Source of the DNA: Octopus sinensis
Lineage: Eukaryota
Assembly (NCBI RefSeq): GCF_006345805.1
Contig: NC_043006.1
Location: 14,012,001 to 14,076,000 of the forward strand
Reading direction: 5' to 3'
DNA: 64,000 nucleotides
The notes beneath the pieces are model-generated. The model was not told the DNA's origin. It saw only the letters and a program-made list of their open reading frames with translations, and made no database searches. Numbering within the stretch: the stretch's first letter is position 1; every line of letters begins with the position of its first letter. The translations under genes and the position numbers were made by a program. Below are positions 513 through 64,000 of the stretch, piece after piece.

Positions 513-610
513 TCTTTGGACTATGCATAGTTTCGACATACATATTGGCAAACCGATCTAATTAAATTAAATTAAATCTATTTGCCACTGGCCTGTCTCG
601 TCAGCAAAGA
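513..610 (-). ncRNA. Type I hammerhead ribozyme, fully canonical core
   Basis: Minus strand reads UCUUUG-CUGACGA-GACA...UGUC-GAA-ACUAUGCAUAGU-C-CAAAGA. Stem I is 6 bp, stem II has an inner UGGCAAA/UUUGCCA helix, stem III is a 12-nt palindrome, and the cleavage triplet is GUC (cut between 519 and 518). Confidence 0.85.
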
Positions 611-766
611 AGCCAGGGGAATATATATCCACGAGGCGACAGCATCGACGCCTCGAGAATATATATTCTAAATTTTCAAAATCTACCGTCACCGCGCCAA
701 CTTCTCAGCAGCAAATATATATATACACAATGTCTGATCAATGTCTGTTGCCATAGTAACAACGTT

Positions 767-1559
767 ATAGCACACAGAGCGAAGTGCTTGGCACAGACTG
801 ACCTTGAACTCTGCTGTGCAAGTGCACTAAGTTTTAACGTTCTAGCTCACTTCCGCTGTTGTTTGTAGCAGTGCTTGGAAGGAACGTGTGTAGCGTGTGA
901 TCTTCGCTTTGACCATGACAGAGAAAGTTGTCATTGTGATACCTCCTCAGATGCCAACGCAAAGTTGCAGAAAGTGTATGGAGACGTGTGTATGAGCCGC
1001 ACACAAGTGTACGAGTGGTTCAGATGTTTCCTAGAAAGCCGAAAAAATGTCGATATTGATGAACCTTCTGGGAAACCCGTAACCAGCAGAACTGAGAAAA
1101 ACATTGCAGATGTGCGTGCAGCTTTGTGAGGAAATTGTCGATTCGTCATCCATGAGTTATCAGAGGATGTGCAGATTAAGTACAGTTCAGTTCAGTCCGT
1201 TATCACTGAAGATTTGAGAATGTGGTGCGTGTCTGCCAAGTTTGTGCCAAAACTGCTTTCAGCTGACCAAAAGGACACTCGGGTTTCAATTCCACAAGAT
1301 CTCCTTGATTGTGTTGAGATCGATGAAAACTTTACGTAGGTCTCTGGGCAGGTATCATCAAGGTTTTAGCAAAATTTGATGCAGATTTTCTGCTCAACTT
1401 TTATCTATCATGATCAATGTGACGATCACACGCTACACACGTTCCTTCCAAGTACTGCTGTAAACAGCGGAAGTGAGCTAGAACGTTAAACTTAGTACGC
1501 ATGCACAGCAGAGTTCAAGGTCAATCTGTACCAAACGGCTTCACTCTGCGTGCTTTAGT
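767..1559 (+). mobile_element. Mariner-derived fold-back element with N-terminal transposase remnant
   Basis: KLQKVYGDVCMSRTQVYEWFRCF..DEPSGKPVTS...SAKFVPKLLSADQK is mariner HTH-like. It is flanked by inverted arms of about 140 bp (767-910 and 1416-1559). Confidence 0.85.
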
Positions 1560-1783
1560 TTCGTTATTATGGCAACTGTCTGGATATTTATTGATCAGAC
1601 CATGTATATACATACGACGGGTTTCCACAAAATTTTCGTCTCGCAAATTGCACAGTGTATTGGTCAAAACGTAAATATTTTACCCCTACACAATATTCTT
1701 TGCATACTGCTTCTCTTCTCAGTTAGAAATTTGAGTAACAAATGCCAAACACAAATGGTTTTTCGTTTTCATGATCCATATAT

Positions 1784-1789
1784 TTTATT
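1784..1789 (-). promoter_or_regulatory. Candidate polyadenylation signal of the Ctr gene
   Basis: AATAAA on the minus strand about 200 nt after the stop codon. The region is AT-rich, so a chance match is possible. Confidence 0.3.
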
Positions 1790-1991
1790 AAAAATTTAAC
1801 TTAAAATATTGAACATATATTCCAATACTGAAAAGAAGTAATCGGAACAAAAATAAATTTTTGTGAAAATTTTAGTGACAAATACTTCAGGTTTTGTATG
1901 AAAAATATTTAAGAACCAAAGGTTTTTCAGTTTTATCAGTGAATGTCTTAAATGTAATATGCACAGACAAAAATGCAATGTATATTTCGTC

Positions 1992-2283
1992 TTAAAATGG
2001 TGTTTCTGTTTGTTTTGTATCGACGAAATTTTTCGTATTTTCTTCTGTAGCTGAATACTTTTTCAATGTGATCATTCTTCGCTTCAAAAAAAAGCATTTG
2101 ATCCAAGGTCGAACAATGAAGAAACCGATGGCTGAGCCACTTATAACAGCTAGGAAAATCCATATATTTCCTGTCATCACACTCAGCATGAGATAATAAG
2201 AGAGTATTATTTGGCAAACATAAGCAAGAGTGCAAGAAAATTTACACGATATCGGTATGCTGTCCGGACCGCAAATATTCTTC
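1992..2283 (-). CDS. SLC31A-like (Ctr): Terminal coding exon of an SLC31/Ctr-family copper transporter (TM2, TM3, C-tail)
   Basis: Translation KNICGPDSIPISCKFSCTLAYVCQIILSYYLMLSVMTGNIWIFLAVISGSAIGFFIVRPWIK...TPF* has the Ctr TM2 MxxxM (MLSVM) and TM3 GxxxG (GSAIG) motifs. Polypyrimidine acceptor ttttgtttttcag at 2284-2296, phase 2; stop TAA at 1994-1992. Confidence 0.85.
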
Positions 2284-3143
2284 CTGAAAAACAAAATTGA
2301 ATGATGGGATAAACAGGTGAACTGTAAATAAAATTCTTTTAACTTCATGTAATAGCAATAAAATTTCTCCGACTGACTTAACGAAACAATAATCTCTGCA
2401 TGAATCGAAATGATTTCATTAGATGACGTTATGAGAATCTAATAGAAAAAAAATAAAATATTTAATGCCATGGTCAACTCCGTTACAAATAAATTTAAGC
2501 ACTTCGTTCATAAGAACAAGACCTGTAACAACATGCGCCTTCACTAGTCAGTTAAGGGGAGACAGTGTCACGTGACAACTTGCTGGGGCTGCCAGCTGGA
2601 GCCTAGTGGCAGGTATTTAAAGGGAAAAATTCAGTCAGAAAAAAAGTCAGTCTGTCACCGGCTGACACTCGCTGACGATACATCGAAGAGGCCAGGGAAC
2701 AGAAGAAAGAAGAAGAAAGAAGACATGCACCCAACACCAAAGCTGAAGACACCTCCGAAAGGGGCGGGGGGCGCCACGTCTAATCGGTAGAGGAGTAGGG
2801 GCCGAAACCGGACGTGGTTCCTCCTATGTGCCTTATTCATGCATATACTTTTATTCTTGGTTCAGTCATTGGACTGCCATCATATTGGGTTACTGTCTTG
2901 AAGGGTTTAATCGATCAAATTGACCCGAGTATTCACATTTTAAACTCTATCGGTAAGCTAAGGGAGCGTAAACAAACCAACACCAGTTGCCAAGCGGCGG
3001 GGGGGAACAAATTTCAAGCCAAGAACGCACGCGCGCGCACACACACATACACCTGTGTATGGCGCGCGCACGTTCTTGTGTGTGTGTGTGTTTGTGTGTA
3101 TTCAAGACTACTTTTAAGATTTTGCTCGAAGAACATAAATATA

Positions 3144-61698: not shown

Positions 61699-62104
61699 AA
61701 CTAGCGCTCTGTCAGTTACGACAACGAGGGTTCCAGCTGATCCGGTCAACCGATCAGCCTGCTCGTGAAATTAATGTGTAAGTGGCTGAGCACTCCACAG
61801 ACACGCAGAGAGTGACAAGGCTGGCCCCTTTGAAATACAAGTACAACTCATTATGTAATATGTATGTATGTATGTATGTATGTATGTATGTATGTATGAA
61901 TGTATGTATGTATGTATGTATGTATGTATGTATGTATGTATGTATGTATGAATGTATGTATGTATGTATGTATGTACATACACACACACACATATATATA
62001 TATAGGCATATATAGGGAGAATTCACGAAAAAAAACAAAAGACGAAGACAGGTGGTGTACAAAACAAACAGATGTATTAGCATAACGCTCGGGAATTGAA
62101 AAAG

Positions 62105-62142
62105 TCTTTTACGTTTCGAGCCTACGCTCTTCTACAGAAAGA
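62105..62142 (-). ncRNA. Minimal hammerhead variant (U at position 6)
   Basis: UCUUU-CUGUAGA-A-GAGC-GUAG-GCUC-GAA-ACGU-A-AAAGA. All three stems are intact and stem III is the palindrome ACGU; A6 is replaced by U. Confidence 0.55.
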
Positions 62143-62839
62143 AGCAAAGAGAGAAACAAGGAGAGAAAAATTGTGCGTAGTGGCTACCGATCTATCATAT
62201 ATATAGGTATATATATTTATGTATGTTTGTGTGTATATAAAGTATGTACATAGAATGTATATATTTCTGTAGTATTTGATGTATTTAAATATATCTTATC
62301 TATTAAAATTTACATGTGTGTATATATATATATATATATATCCTGGCATTTTGCAAGGTTTTAGTGAGTAATTTTATATTTAATGTGTTGACACAGACAT
62401 CACTGTTTGACACTCTTTTTCAGATCTGTTTTTATTAATCCTAATTATCTTCATTCTCATTACAGGGAAAATTTCATTTGATTAATAATTACTTTCGATT
62501 CACCGCATTTAATATATTTCATGCAGAAAATCTCTTTGAAAATTTTACATGTATGCCTCTGTGTGTGTGTGTGGTGTGTGTTGTGTGTGTGTTGTGTGGT
62601 GTGTGTGTGTGTGTGTGTGTGGGTGTTAGTGTGTTGTGTGTGGTGTGCGGTGTATGTGGTGTATATGTGTGGTGTGTGTGTGTGCAGGCACACACACACA
62701 CATACATACATACATACATACATACATACATACTACATACATACATACATACATACATACATATATATATATATAATATATATATATATATATATATATA
62801 TATATATATATATATATATATATATATAGTATTTTCCGA

Positions 62840-62913
62840 TGGCCAGATAACTGAAGAGATAGCGTCGTGGATTTCCACCTCGGCATCCGAAACTCGTAGT
62901 TTTATCATGGCTA
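62840..62913 (+). ncRNA. Type I hammerhead ribozyme
   Basis: UGGCCAGAUAA-CUGAAGA-GAU(A)GC...GUGG-AUUU-CCAC...GCAUC(C)-GAA-ACU-CGU-AGU-U-UUAUC(A)UGGCUA. Long stem I, intact core, imperfect stem II, GUU triplet (cut after 62901). Confidence 0.65.
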
Positions 62914-63017
62914 CCGAATAATTGTCACATATTACATTTACACATATATATACCGGAGTAAGCACATAAATGTGAAACAAGGTGGGGAAAAGAGTACTCA
63001 AATACCAGAGGTAGAGT

Positions 63018-63134
63018 AATATACTTTATTTAAAAGCAGTAGAAATATAACAAAAGCTTTTCACTTTCACGGGAACGCGAAACTCTGAGTAACAGCTTTT
63101 GTTATTTCTACTGCTTTTAAATAAAGTATATATT
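63018..63134. repeat. Short inverted repeat containing the 3' half of a hammerhead-like motif
   Basis: Arms 63018-63058 and 63094-63134. The spacer has ACG-GGAA-CGC-GAA-ACUCUGAGU-A-ACAGC but no CUGANGA strand. Confidence 0.5.
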
Positions 63135-63500
63135 CTGGGTTCAGTCCCACTACGTGACATCTTGGGCAAGTGTCTTCTGCTATAGCCTCGGGCCGACCAA
63201 TGCCTTGTGAGTGGATTTGGTAGGACGGAAACTGAAAGAAGCCTGTCGTATATATGTATATATATGTATGTATGTGTATGTATAGTTTGTGTGTCTGTGT
63301 TTGTCCCTCAGGCATTACTTGACAACCGATGCTGTGTGTTACGTCCCGTCACTTAGCGGCTCGGCAAAAGAGACCGATAGAATAATAAGTACTGGGCTTA
63401 CAAAGAATAATAAGTCCCGGGGTCGATTTGCTCGACTAAAGGCGGTGCTCCAGCATGGCCGCAGTCAAATGACTGAAACAAGTAAAAGAGTAAAAGAGTA
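63135..63500 (+). mobile_element. SINE family A, 5'-truncated
   Basis: Starts at ctgggttcagtccc. Confidence 0.85.
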
Positions 63501-64000
63501 TATATATATATATGTGTGTGTGTGTGTGTGTGTGTGTGTGTGTGTGTGTGTGTATACAGAAAGAGAGAGAGGAAGTGGGAATCGAAATGGGATATAGGAT
63601 AATTCTGAGCATTCATATCTCTGGAACCGAGTAAACTGAAACTCCATAGAAAACTCCTCGAGAGAATTATACTTGTAAATCATATGATACGCTTTTGCCA
63701 TGCTGAATCAGCCTGAAATTTTATGTTAAGTGTACACGTGTCTAAGGAATACTCACACCTTCATTCAGGAGTGGGTAATATTGTTGTTCGAACAATCGAG
63801 ATCTCATCGTCGTCGAACAACGGAGATCCAAAAGCATCACCACTCTAAGCTTTTTGCGTACATGTCTTTGTCCGTATAATGTCTCTTTGTCATGGGGGAC
63901 ACGAAGACACGCTAGCGGAAACTCAGAGTAGCAACACAGCGAGTCATGAATTCTCAATGAATATATAAACATACATATACAAATGTATATAAAGATGTGT

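What the first reader, a model, noticed from the sequence alone, without database searches (positions are those of the whole stretch)
513..63935. About ten apparently unrelated hammerhead-ribozyme families in one 64-kb window
Seen in sequence: type I hammerhead folds at 513-610(-), 24378-24422(-), 31270-31359(-), 31541-31629(+), 47453-47559(-), 50515-50607(+) and 62840-62913(+) with a consensus CUGANGA/GAAA core. A U6 variant lies at 62105-62142(-), with a decayed paralog at 7.6 kb, and relics at 25.2, 35.5/35.7, 49.7, 63.07 and 63.9 kb. By eye the families share little beyond the core, yet the stems pair. Stem III is usually a self-complementary palindrome (ACUAUGCAUAGU, AGAUCU, ACACGUGU, ACGAUCGU, ACGU). 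Established: Penelope-like element pseudo-LTRs carry minimal type I hammerheads that can cleave as dimers through a palindromic stem III, and non-autonomous ribozyme-bearing retroelements (retrozymes) exist in animals. Inference: this genome hosts a large, diversified population of solo ribozyme pseudo-LTRs or retrozymes mobilised by Penelope enzymes, many with an unusually long structured stem II. No ORF track would show this.
Basis: partly seen in the sequence, partly recalled or inferred. Interest (0 to 1): 0.88.

Follow-up and report, generated by a model that had tools for sequence, protein, structure and literature searches.

The report
Penelope-type hammerhead ribozymes in octopus DNA
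This stretch of octopus genome really does hold seven self-cleaving "hammerhead" RNA motifs at six places, but they are best explained as leftover end-pieces of Penelope-like jumping genes that insert into TA repeats, a kind of element already described in other animals.

Summary
One descriptor returns exactly those seven, against 0.16 hits per permuted decoy core and 0-0.5 in dinucleotide shuffles. Two hallmarks I did not select for are enriched: a G10.1-C11.1 pair and a fully palindromic helix III, each in 5 of 6 loci against 4.5% of decoy hits (P≈1e-6). "About ten families" is too many. HH3 and HH4 are the arms of one palindrome. The U6 variant and its 7.6 kb paralog both lack the core. The relics cannot be told from chance. 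Rfam's Hammerhead_1 scores only 15-20 bits (gathering score 34).

The window is octopus DNA. It holds one decayed GIY-YIG nuclease remnant of a Hydra-clade Penelope-like element (48320-49077). Reference Hydra-clade elements fetched from other assemblies carry one HHR per pLTR, with a long helix II and a 10-nt palindromic helix III. In the one reference where the element end is visible, it ends on (TA)n about 105 nt after the HHR. A covariance model built only from those references finds HH6, HH3 and HH4 (E≤1e-4) and HH1 (E=0.05). The HHR segments are non-coding islands of about 115-475 bp beside TA microsatellites, and none is in a tandem array. This is a new member of a known kind.

The parts
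513..610 (-). HH1. Type I hammerhead: helix I UCUUUG/CAAAGA, core CUGACGA (604-598), 63-nt helix II hairpin, GAAA (534-531), 12-nt palindromic helix III ACUAUGCAUAGU, cleavage after C at 519 (GUC).
   Evidence: Rfam RF00163 gives 19.6 bits over the full model. The helix II domain folds with z=-5.8. External model R2 gives 15.6 bits, E=0.053.
400..712 (-). HH1-bearing segment, about 310 bp and non-coding, bounded by TA runs on both sides. Its 3' end abuts (TA)n 325-399, 113 nt after the ribozyme.
   Evidence: One search gives the sequence. In one search, the paralogous copy of the flanking repeat (1395-1640) lacks this segment, so it acts as an empty site.
24378..24422 (-). HH2. Compact min-HHR-like motif: core CUGAAGA, an unpaired G after A9, helix II GUCAC/GUGAC, helix III AGAUCU, CUC triplet, and helix I with a 1-nt bulge. 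This is the weakest of the seven.
   Evidence: It passes the bulge-tolerant descriptors. It is not detected by Rfam or by model R2. It has no TA flank.
31213..31687 (.). Head-to-head inverted pair of two 5'-truncated copies of about 237 bp, with arms 97% identical. The left end abuts (TA)n. About 150 bp of unique sequence lies before the right-hand (TA)n at 31841.
31270..31359 (-). HH3. Hammerhead in the left arm: core CUGAAGA 31351-31345, 55 nt between A9 and G12, helix III ACACGUGU, cleavage after A at 31278 (GUA).
   Evidence: Model R1 gives 22.0 bits, E=0.0042. Model R2 gives 24.0 bits, E=1.1e-4.
31541..31629 (+). HH4. The same hammerhead in the right arm: core 31549-31555, cleavage after A at 31621.
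   Evidence: Rfam RF00163 gives 14.9 bits. Model R2 gives 24.1 bits, E=1e-4. The dimer MFE uses ACACGUGU as an intermolecular helix III.
47453..47559 (-). HH5. Imperfect hammerhead: core CUGAAGA, U-U at 10.1/11.1, 78 nt between A9 and G12, helix III ACGCGUGU with one G-U, GUA triplet. It lies 113 nt from a compound (TCTA/TCTG/TA)n microsatellite, in inverted orientation, about 760 nt to the 5' side of the Penelope remnant.
   Evidence: The helix II domain is not better folded than shuffles (z=-0.45). It is not listed by R2.
48320..49077 (+). Decayed C-terminal GIY-YIG endonuclease remnant of a Hydra-clade Penelope-like element. It has the CxCX5C linker 'CNCRNPNTC' and the motif 'VVYQATI...YIGYT'. 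The frame is broken after 48955, and no RT part is present.
   Evidence: phmmer finds 853 relatives. Relative P0144 has RT with YRDDG, the RWK and DKT motifs, and GIY-YIG. The clade definition is in PMC8557442. tblastn finds this as the only clear remnant in the window. No HHR lies downstream at 49080-49540.
50515..50607 (+). HH6. Type I hammerhead: helix I UUGG/CCAA (extendable), core CUGAUGA 50522-50528, 59 nt between A9 and G12 with base GUGCU/AGUAC, helix III ACGAUCGU, cleavage after A at 50599 (GUA).
   Evidence: Rfam RF00163 gives 18.6 bits. It is the best hit of external model R2, at 25.1 bits and E=5e-5. It shares the G-C, U-A, G-U base of helix II with references L002 and L005.
50171..50640 (+). 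HH6-bearing segment, about 470 bp and non-coding, lying between two TA microsatellites. The ribozyme ends about 32 nt before the 3' TA run.
62840..62913 (+). HH7. Hammerhead-like motif: core CUGAAGA 62851-62857, helix II GAU/AUC with an unpaired C before G12, helix III a true hairpin (ACU-CGU-AGU), GUU triplet. It begins 12 nt after (TA)n 62777-62828.
   Evidence: R2 gives 14.6 bits, E=0.11, which is noise level. Rfam gives no match.
62105..62142 (-). HH8. Hammerhead-like relic with a non-consensus core CUGUAGA. The rest fits a minimal motif (GAGC-GUAG-GCUC, GAAACGU-A).
   Evidence: R2 gives 9.6 bits, E=4.2. One-mismatch cores are not enriched.
7597..7634 (-). Paralog of HH8. The surrounding repeat is 87% identical, and the core here reads UUGUCGA, so the family is not a canonical hammerhead in either copy.
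   Evidence: Coordinates are derived from alignment A1.
25271..25333 (-). Possible decayed Hydra-type hammerhead: CUGAUGAGUG...UAC followed by AAAAC, which would be G12 changed to A.
   Evidence: R2 gives 14.8 bits, E=0.096, which is noise level.
49781..50091 (+). Decayed relative of an HHR-bearing repeat family seen in Octopus bimaculoides (L001:3592-4387). The ribozyme part is missing here. It lies between two (TA)n tracts.
58897..58996 (.). Assembly gap (100 N) in GA-rich low complexity. It is not part of any hammerhead site.

Best explanation
The seven motifs are genuine type I hammerhead ribozyme sequences. They are carried by short, non-coding, mostly 5'-truncated 3'-terminal (pseudo-LTR) fragments of Penelope-like retroelements, chiefly of the Hydra clade, in an octopus genome.

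Inferred mechanism, from published work on the family. A Penelope element is transcribed through partial tandem copies. The GIY-YIG nuclease nicks (TA)n targets and the RT copies the RNA from its 3' end. Reverse transcription often stops early, or a second inverted copy is made. What accumulates in TA microsatellites is therefore the 3' end of the element, which is where the hammerhead sits.

Shown by sequence and folding. The palindromic helix III is too short to be stable in one molecule (1-2 bp plus a tetraloop in HH2-HH6). It can form a 6-12 bp helix between two copies. The ribozymes are therefore expected to cleave mainly as dimers in multimeric transcripts.

Inferred consequence. The solitary and inverted copies in this window are probably inert relics, not working ribozymes. 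Different families (sequence-unrelated stems, different ages) have landed in the same microsatellite-rich region.
For: Motif reality:
- Seven real hits against 0.16 per decoy core. Shuffle means were 0 to 0.46.
- Features not selected for, G10.1-C11.1 and a palindromic helix III, occur in 5 of 6 loci against 4.5% of decoy hits.
- Rfam Hammerhead_1 aligns over its full model to HH1, HH6 and HH4.

Penelope link:
- A Hydra-clade GIY-YIG remnant with the CxCX5C linker lies at 48320-49077.
- Reference Hydra-clade elements L002, L003 and L005-L009 each have one HHR per unit in the inter-ORF pLTR, 182-821 nt past the stop. Helix II is 10-12 bp and helix III is a 10-nt palindrome or near-palindrome.
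- L002 ends on (TA)n about 105 nt after its HHR. HH1 and HH5 each lie 113 nt from a microsatellite.
- Model R2, built only from those external HHRs, finds HH6 (E=5e-5), HH4 and HH3 (E=1e-4) and HH1 (E=0.05) in an unfiltered search of both strands.

Insertion anatomy:
- The HH1 segment is bounded by TA runs and is absent from a paralogous flank.
- HH3 and HH4 form a head-to-head inverted pair with 97% identical arms. This matches the inverted 5'-truncated copies described in PMC8557442 and the opposite-strand pairs 100-700 bp apart in PMC4209133.
- Three of five loci have (TA)>=8 within 130 nt on the 3' side, against 8% for random positions.

Dimer model: in the dimer MFE, HH1, HH4 and HH5 form helix III between the two molecules.

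Host: the window shares its SINE families at 86-90% identity with Octopus bimaculoides chromosome CM046609.1. That locus holds another inverted HHR pair between (TA)n tracts.
Against: - No HHR here is physically joined to an intact RT-EN gene. The single nuclease remnant has no HHR in the 460 nt downstream, and HH6 lies 1.4 kb away, beyond two TA tracts and another insertion.
- HH2, HH5 and HH7 are not recognised by the external model. HH2 has no TA flank. With about 0.2-0.3 chance hits expected under the relaxed descriptors, one of these three could be fortuitous.
- All Rfam scores are below gathering.
- No further genomic copies of any of the six families could be retrieved, so within-family covariation is untested.
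- 27-113 nt follow the cleavage site before the element ends. Cleavage therefore does not define the integrated 3' end, and the ribozyme's role in the transposition cycle remains unclear.
- No cleavage was measured.
Confidence: 0.8

Rival explanations
1. The segments are monomeric copies of non-autonomous 'non-LTR retrozymes'. These are short HHR-bearing units that amplify through self-cleaved, ligated circular RNAs using Penelope enzymes in trans. On this reading they are not truncated autonomous Penelope elements.
For: All segments are short (about 115-475 bp), AT-rich and non-coding, within the 51-972 bp range reported for retrozyme families. Dispersed monomers are common. No coding remnant adjoins HH1, HH3/4, HH6 or HH7. 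Retrozymes are reported to derive from Penelope pLTRs, so the two readings overlap.
Against: The defining head-to-tail tandem arrangement is absent from the window. The HHR-to-end distance and the TA target match an intact autonomous element. A 3' UTR of about 390 nt, as in L002, already explains coding-free truncated copies. No circular RNA data are available.
Confidence: 0.25
2. The motifs are chance matches in an AT-rich, repeat-rich and palindrome-rich sequence.
For: Rfam finds nothing at gathering. The core heptamer itself is not enriched: 34 occurrences on both strands, within the 3-39 range of permuted heptamers. HH2, HH5 and HH7 each need a defect. One-mismatch-core 'relics' occur at the decoy rate.
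Against: The true core ranks first of 540 core combinations on every descriptor. Shuffles give 0-0.5 hits. Unselected hallmarks are enriched at P about 1e-6. An independent external model gives E<=1e-4 for three sites.
Confidence: 0.03
3. Some of the motifs, HH2 in particular, belong to SINE-like elements mobilised by LINE enzymes, as with the Schistosoma Sm-alpha hammerhead repeats. On this reading they are not Penelope elements.
For: HH2 has no TA flank, and an A-rich run follows about 95 nt 3' of it. A LINE-type RT tail (zf-RVT) lies at 20121-20936.
Against: The abundant SINE-like families of this window carry no hammerhead, since no descriptor hit falls inside them. HH2 has Penelope min-HHR traits: an unpaired nucleotide after A9 and a palindromic AGAUCU.
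Confidence: 0.05
4. The loci are domesticated host elements, for example hairpin-RNA or small-RNA sources (the 31.2-31.7 kb palindrome) or regulatory ribozymes.
For: The HH3/HH4 palindrome would fold into a hairpin of about 237 bp if transcribed.
Against: There is no evidence of conservation, expression or genic context. The location in microsatellites and the truncated, decayed state fit neutral transposon debris.
Confidence: 0.03

Closest known systems
Hammerheads of Hydra-clade Penelope-like elements (Craig et al. 2021, PMC8557442)
   Same: - Type I topology, with one HHR in the pLTR downstream of an RT plus C-terminal GIY-YIG ORF.
- Insertion into (TA)n.
- Long helix II and an extended palindromic helix III.
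- A model built from three such external families detects HH6, HH3/4 and, marginally, HH1.
- A nuclease remnant with the clade's CxCX5C linker lies in the window.
   Different: - The octopus helix II domains are 54-78 nt, against 25-30 nt in the references.
- No intact RT-EN copy is in the window.
- HH2, HH5 and HH7 are not recognised by the reference model.
- The paper names Mollusca among the clade's hosts, but not octopus for this clade.
[quoted passage not shown]
   Same: - Extreme sequence variability between families in one genome.
- Palindromic positions in helix III, and conserved G10.1-C11.1.
- Mostly solitary truncated copies, and opposite-strand pairs 100-700 bp apart.
- Expected dimeric action.
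   Different: - Only HH2 has the unpaired nucleotide between A9 and 10.1 that is typical of min-HHRs.
- The others keep a real helix III of 2-4 potential base pairs plus a palindromic loop, so they are closer to 'canonical' metazoan type I motifs.
Non-LTR retrozymes of animals (Cervera and de la Pena 2020, PMC7229834; Li et al. 2026, bioRxiv 10.64898/2026.07.22.740005)
   Same: Short, AT-rich, non-coding units with a type I HHR. They are derived from Penelope pLTRs, and dispersed monomers exist.
   Different: The defining tandem head-to-tail arrays are absent from this window. Circular RNA is untested.
Dimeric hammerheads of amphibian satellite DNA and axolotl retrozymes
   Same: Helix III consists of 1-2 bp capped by a palindromic tetraloop, which gives efficient cleavage only as a double hammerhead. 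HH2-HH6 have this form.
   Different: The amphibian motifs have a 4-bp helix II with conserved loop 1/loop 2 contacts and occur in long tandem arrays.
Rfam RF00163 Hammerhead_1
   Same: Full-length alignment to the 45-position model, with all core positions matched, for HH1, HH6 and HH4.
   Different: Scores of 15-20 bits against a gathering score of 34, mainly because of the 50-57-nt insert in helix II. HH2, HH7 and HH8 are not matched.

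Membership tests
Hammerhead ribozyme, type I | Conserved core C3-U4-G5-A6-N7-G8-A9 ... 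G12-A13-A14, A15.1-U16.1, and a non-G residue at the cleavage position 17 | tested here: met
   All seven sites meet it, with triplets GUC, CUC, GUA (four sites) and GUU. HH8 and its paralog fail at position 6 or 3.
Hammerhead ribozyme, type I | Three helices around the core, with the open ends in helix I | tested here: met
   Descriptor hits. HH1 and HH6 have no defect. HH3/4 have one mismatch each in helices I and II. HH2, HH5 and HH7 each have a bulge or a mismatch next to the core.
Hammerhead ribozyme, type I | Score at or above the Rfam RF00163 gathering threshold (34 bits) | tested here: not met
   The scores are 19.6, 18.6 and 14.9 bits for HH1, HH6 and HH4. HH2, HH7 and HH8 get none. 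HH5 was not given a short-stretch search.
Hammerhead ribozyme, type I | Site-specific self-cleavage giving 5'-OH and 2',3'-cyclic phosphate ends | not testable with these tools
   This needs in vitro transcription of monomers and tandem dimers.
Penelope-like-element hammerhead (pLTR HHR) | Location in the pseudo-LTR of an element encoding RT and GIY-YIG nuclease | tested here: inconclusive
   One decayed nuclease remnant lies at 48320-49077. HH6 is 1.4 kb downstream on the same strand, and HH5 is inverted about 760 nt to its 5' side. There is no continuous element. The other HHRs have no coding neighbour.
Penelope-like-element hammerhead (pLTR HHR) | Palindromic helix III or loop 3, allowing a double-hammerhead dimer | tested here: met
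   Five of six loci, against 4.5% of decoy hits. Helix III forms between molecules in the dimer MFE of HH1, HH4 and HH5. HH7 is the exception.
Penelope-like-element hammerhead (pLTR HHR) | Conserved G10.1-C11.1 pair | tested here: met
   Five of six loci, against 4.5% of decoy hits, P=1.1e-6. HH5 has U-U there.
Penelope-like-element hammerhead (pLTR HHR) | Unpaired nucleotide between A9 and 10.1 (min-HHR subtype) | tested here: not met
   Only HH2 has it. The Hydra-clade references lack it too, so this separates the subtype rather than excluding a Penelope origin.
Hydra-clade Penelope HHR | Recognised by a covariance model built only from external Hydra-clade pLTR hammerheads | tested here: inconclusive
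   Met for HH6 (E=5e-5) and for HH4 and HH3 (E=1e-4). Borderline for HH1 (E=0.053). Not met for HH7 (E=0.11). HH2 and HH5 are not listed. The model rests on only three families.
Hydra-clade Penelope HHR | Element inserted into (TA)n, with the HHR near the 3' end | tested here: met
   Reference L002 has 105 nt from the HHR to the element end on (TA)n. In the window the distances are HH1 113, HH3 57, HH6 32 and HH5 113 nt to a compound microsatellite, and HH7 starts 12 nt after (TA)n. HH2 is not met.
Hydra-clade Penelope-like element (the ORF at 48326-48955) | C-terminal GIY-YIG nuclease with a CxCX5C linker; RT with RWK and DKT motifs | tested here: inconclusive
   The linker CNCRNPNTC and a GIY-YIG-like motif are present. 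There are 853 relatives, and relative P0144 shows RWK, DKT and YRDDG. The RT part is missing from the window copy. Pfam finds no GIY-YIG in the window ORF itself.
Non-LTR retrozyme | Head-to-tail tandem repeats of units of about 170-400 nt, each with a type I HHR | tested here: not met
   TRF and self-BLAST show no tandem array at any HHR site. Only an inverted pair was found.
Non-LTR retrozyme | Expression as linear and circular RNAs of unit length | not testable with these tools
   No transcriptome data are available here.

The most novel reading that the evidence does not exclude
Octopus genomes may carry an unusually dense and diversified population of Hydra-clade-derived hammerhead elements, on the order of one locus per 10-12 kb in the 85 kb examined. 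Their helix II has expanded into a structured domain of 54-78 nt, two to three times the length in reference Hydra-clade ribozymes. They may persist as non-autonomous lineages in a genome where, in the DNA examined, no intact autonomous copy was seen. That would be a cephalopod-specific ribozyme variant, and an accessible system for asking what hammerheads do for Penelope elements.
Probability: 0.15. Interest if true: 0.5.

Novelty: new member of a known kind. Interest (0 to 1): 0.3.

Why it matters
The result shows that a reader working by eye correctly found ribozymes that Rfam's curated thresholds miss because of large helix II inserts. Hammerhead content in invertebrate genomes is therefore probably under-annotated. 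It also adds cephalopods to the hosts of HHR-bearing, TA-targeting Hydra-clade Penelope elements. It gives concrete sequences (HH1, HH3/4, HH6) for testing monomeric against dimeric cleavage. Biologically it is ordinary transposon debris. The phenomena seen here are all already published: variable HHR families, a palindromic helix III, solitary and inverted copies, and a pLTR origin.

Tried and rejected
- Rfam at gathering found nothing. At E<=10 the listed rows for the whole window were dominated by microsatellite 'miRNA' artefacts. Only short-stretch searches exposed the Hammerhead_1 matches.
- The word-indexed protein search with the window ORF found nothing. The exhaustive phmmer search was needed.
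- Exact-protein lookups of two window ORFs found no source contig, so the exact assembly is unidentified.
- Two metagenome scans for exact HH1 and HH4 patterns returned nothing. No further genomic copies of any window family could be obtained, so within-family covariation was not tested.
- No hammerhead remnant lies downstream of the nuclease remnant.
- MAFFT misaligned the reference hammerheads twice. I solved this by seeding a model from two equal-length sequences and letting Infernal align the third family.
- The relic claims at 35.5/35.7 kb are core-only matches. The scan with one-mismatch cores shows no enrichment.
- Two helix II fold rows for L002 and L003 used wrong coordinates and were ignored.
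- I considered counting pair covariation across the seven sites. I rejected it as circular, because the sites were selected for pairing. Decoy cores and unselected hallmarks were used instead.

Full report
**Observation**

I read all eight listed sites and wrote descriptors for a type I hammerhead: helix I, CUGANGA, helix II, GAAA, helix III, U-H, helix I.

- A defect-free descriptor finds HH1 (513-610, minus strand) and HH6 (50515-50607, plus strand).
- Allowing one mismatch adds HH3, HH4, HH5 and HH7.
- Allowing a bulge and an unpaired nucleotide after A9 adds HH2.

I used two nulls.

- In 100 dinucleotide shuffles the means were 0, 0.46 and 0.05 hits. The real counts were 2, 6 and 4.
- I also ran 539 permuted 'decoy' cores on the real sequence, which keeps its native hairpins and palindromes. 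The means were 0.007, 0.21 and 0.006, and 0.16 per decoy for the unified descriptor.
- The true core ranks first of 540 combinations on every measure.

Two hallmarks of genuine metazoan and Penelope hammerheads that no descriptor required are strongly enriched. A G10.1-C11.1 pair occurs in 5 of 6 independent loci, and so does a fully self-complementary helix III. Each occurs in 4.5% of decoy hits (P=1.1e-6 each). The segments share nothing beyond the core.

**Limits of the observation**

- HH3 and HH4 are the arms of one palindrome (31213-31687) and are 97% identical. There are therefore six loci.
- The 'U6 variant' HH8 and its 7.6 kb paralog are 87% identical, but both lack a consensus core.
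- One-mismatch cores occur at the decoy rate, 3 against a mean of 2.9. Relics therefore cannot be established from the motif alone.
- The 35.5/35.7 kb relics are core-only matches.
- Rfam reports nothing at gathering. On short stretches, Hammerhead_1 aligns end to end with HH1 (19.6 bits), HH6 (18.6) and HH4 (14.9). All are below the 34-bit threshold, because 50-57 nt are inserted in helix II. HH2, HH7 and HH8 are not matched. HH5 was not given a short-stretch search.
- The assembly gap (58897-58996) lies in GA-rich low complexity, 3.1 kb from the nearest site. Continuity across it cannot be tested, and nothing here depends on it.

**What the window is**

The window is microsatellite-rich, 26-42% G+C by 4-kb segment, and full of SINE-like repeats.

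- The ORF at 48326-48955 has 853 phmmer relatives.
- The window ORF has the CxCX5C linker (CNCRNPNTC). These are the published diagnostics of the Hydra clade of Penelope-like elements. That clade is described as short (<3 kb), carrying canonical hammerheads, and almost always inserted into (TA)n (PMC8557442).
- tblastn shows this to be the only clear Penelope coding remnant in the window. It is decayed, and no ribozyme survives downstream of it.
- A close relative of the best hit is annotated in Octopus bimaculoides. Its 21 kb locus L001 shares the window's SINE family at 86-90% identity, so the window is octopus DNA.
- L001 also holds an inverted pair of a compact hammerhead family between (TA)n tracts. 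The window has a decayed relative of that family, without the ribozyme, at 49781-50091.

**Reference elements**

A profile search returned 333 family members (E<=1e-8). Many of the 120 listed are proteins of about 700 aa on contigs of 2.4-3 kb. I fetched four families.

- L003 is a three-unit tandem with a 3169 bp period.
- L002 has two pLTRs (1871-2389 and 4444-4950), and the element ends exactly on (TA)n.
- Three of the four families carry one hammerhead per unit in the inter-ORF region, 182-821 nt after the stop. Helix II is 10-12 bp and helix III is a 10-nt palindrome or near-palindrome: ACAAUAUUGU, ACAAAUUUGU, ACAGUUCUGU.
- In L002 the ribozyme ends about 105 nt before the element end. 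HH1 and HH5 each lie 113 nt from their microsatellite.
- A 3' UTR of about 390 nt, as in L002, explains why truncated copies shorter than that contain no coding sequence.

**Independent model**

I built a covariance model from the external hammerheads only and searched the whole window on both strands without filters.

| Site | Bits | E-value |
|---|---|---|
| HH6 | 25.1 | 5e-5 |
| HH4 | 24.1 | 1e-4 |
| HH3 | 24.0 | 1.1e-4 |
| HH1 | 15.6 | 0.053 |
| 25271-25333 'relic' (CUGAUGAGUG...UAC-AAAAC) | 14.8 | 0.096 |
| HH7 | 14.6 | 0.11 |
| HH8 | 9.6 | 4.2 |
| HH2, HH5 | not listed | >10 |

Membership of the Hydra-clade type is therefore supported for two loci, plausible for a third, and open for the rest. 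The others may derive from other Penelope clades or be too diverged to score.

**Insertion anatomy**

- The HH1 segment (about 400-712) is bounded by TA runs. It is missing from a paralogous copy of the flanking repeat, which serves as a natural empty site.
- The HH6 segment (50171-50640) lies between two TA tracts.
- HH7 starts 12 nt after (TA)n.
- The left arm of the HH3/HH4 pair abuts (TA)n.
- Random positions have (TA)>=8 within 130 nt on the 3' side 8% of the time. Three of five loci do.
- The head-to-head pair matches the inverted 5'-truncated copies described for Penelope insertions and the opposite-strand pairs 100-700 bp apart reported in 2014.
- No tandem array exists at any site, so the defining retrozyme arrangement is not met. 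Dispersed retrozyme monomers and their pLTR origin are, however, documented.

**Mechanism**

Shown here:
- the core, the helices and the palindromes;
- the possibility of a 6-12 bp intermolecular helix III, which forms in the dimer MFE of HH1, HH4 and HH5;
- a long, well-folded helix II in HH1 (z=-5.8), HH3/4 (-2.0) and HH7 (-2.0), but not in HH5 or HH6.

Inferred from published work:
- cleavage occurs as double hammerheads in multimeric transcripts;
- integration is by target-primed reverse transcription at nuclease-nicked (TA)n, with frequent 5' truncation and inverted second copies.

Solitary and inverted copies are probably inert.

One point remains unexplained. Between 27 and 113 nt follow the cleavage site before the element ends, here and in the intact reference. 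Cleavage therefore does not set the integrated 3' end.

**Comparison and novelty**

Every qualitative feature is already in the literature. These are variable families within one genome, a palindromic helix III, G10.1-C11.1, solitary truncated copies and inverted pairs (PMC4209133), Hydra-clade elements in aquatic invertebrates including molluscs with HHRs and TA targeting (PMC8557442), and a pLTR origin of retrozymes (the 2026 preprint).

I found no paper on octopus hammerheads in the held library. The helix II domains here are two to three times longer than in the references. I rate this a new member of a known kind, with interest about 0.3.

The density of about one locus per 10-12 kb, over 85 kb of octopus DNA, comes from a window that was selected for this feature. 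It should not be extrapolated without a genome-wide search.

Noticed in passing
window 8686-9069, 16723-17113, 18137-18557, 24765-25135, 39514-39898, 6886-7296: A SINE-like repeat family of about 385 bp, with at least six copies at 88-98% identity. ARAGORN finds no tRNA-like head anywhere in the window.
   Followed up: partly
window 3132-3548, 10398-10849, 22381-22769, 28214-28565, 58434-58894, 63133-63505; L001:1949-2158: A second repeat family of about 420 bp, also present in Octopus bimaculoides at 86-90% identity. One copy gives a weak tblastn hit to a Penelope nuclease relative (10583-10810, E=4e-5), which may be spurious or may hint at a Penelope-derived SINE.
   Followed up: no
window 11615-12995 and 12851-14198: A tandem duplication of about 1.3 kb at 93% identity. 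Each copy holds an identical 114-aa ORF with no Pfam match.
   Followed up: no
window 150-328; 35389-35817; 63019-63131: Three further palindromes or foldback elements. The first lies inside a (TA)n tract next to HH1. The second carries CUGAUGA cores but no hammerhead. The third lies next to HH7 and belongs to a family also found in L001:17400-17531.
   Followed up: partly
window 20121-20936(-), 42913-43473(-), 52110-52520(+): Other transposon protein relics. There is a LINE-type RT tail with zf-RVT (Pfam E=5e-6), a mariner-like transposase C-terminus (by eye only), and a weak hAT dimerisation domain (E=0.0025, below the cutoff).
   Followed up: partly
L001:3592-4387 (O. bimaculoides CM046609.1) and window 49781-50091: An inverted pair of a compact hammerhead family between (TA)n tracts in O. 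bimaculoides. One copy has CUGAUGA and the other CUGGUGA. The window has a decayed relative lacking the ribozyme part.
   Followed up: partly
L003:1-10115 (ENA ERZ25073868): Three tandem, 99% identical Hydra-clade Penelope units (704-aa ORF, period 3169 bp). Each has an internal 214-bp sub-repeat and one hammerhead. This looks like a recently active element in an unidentified animal.
   Followed up: partly
window 17343-17804 and 33575-34350: Very long trinucleotide microsatellites, about 157 copies of (GAA)n and about 220 of (ATC/ATT)n. They create spurious long ORFs on several frames.
   Followed up: no
window 513-610, 47453-47559, L002:4786-4948: In both the window copies and the intact reference element, about 105-113 nt lie between the hammerhead and the element's 3' end. 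Ribozyme cleavage therefore cannot be what defines the integrated 3' terminus.
   Followed up: partly
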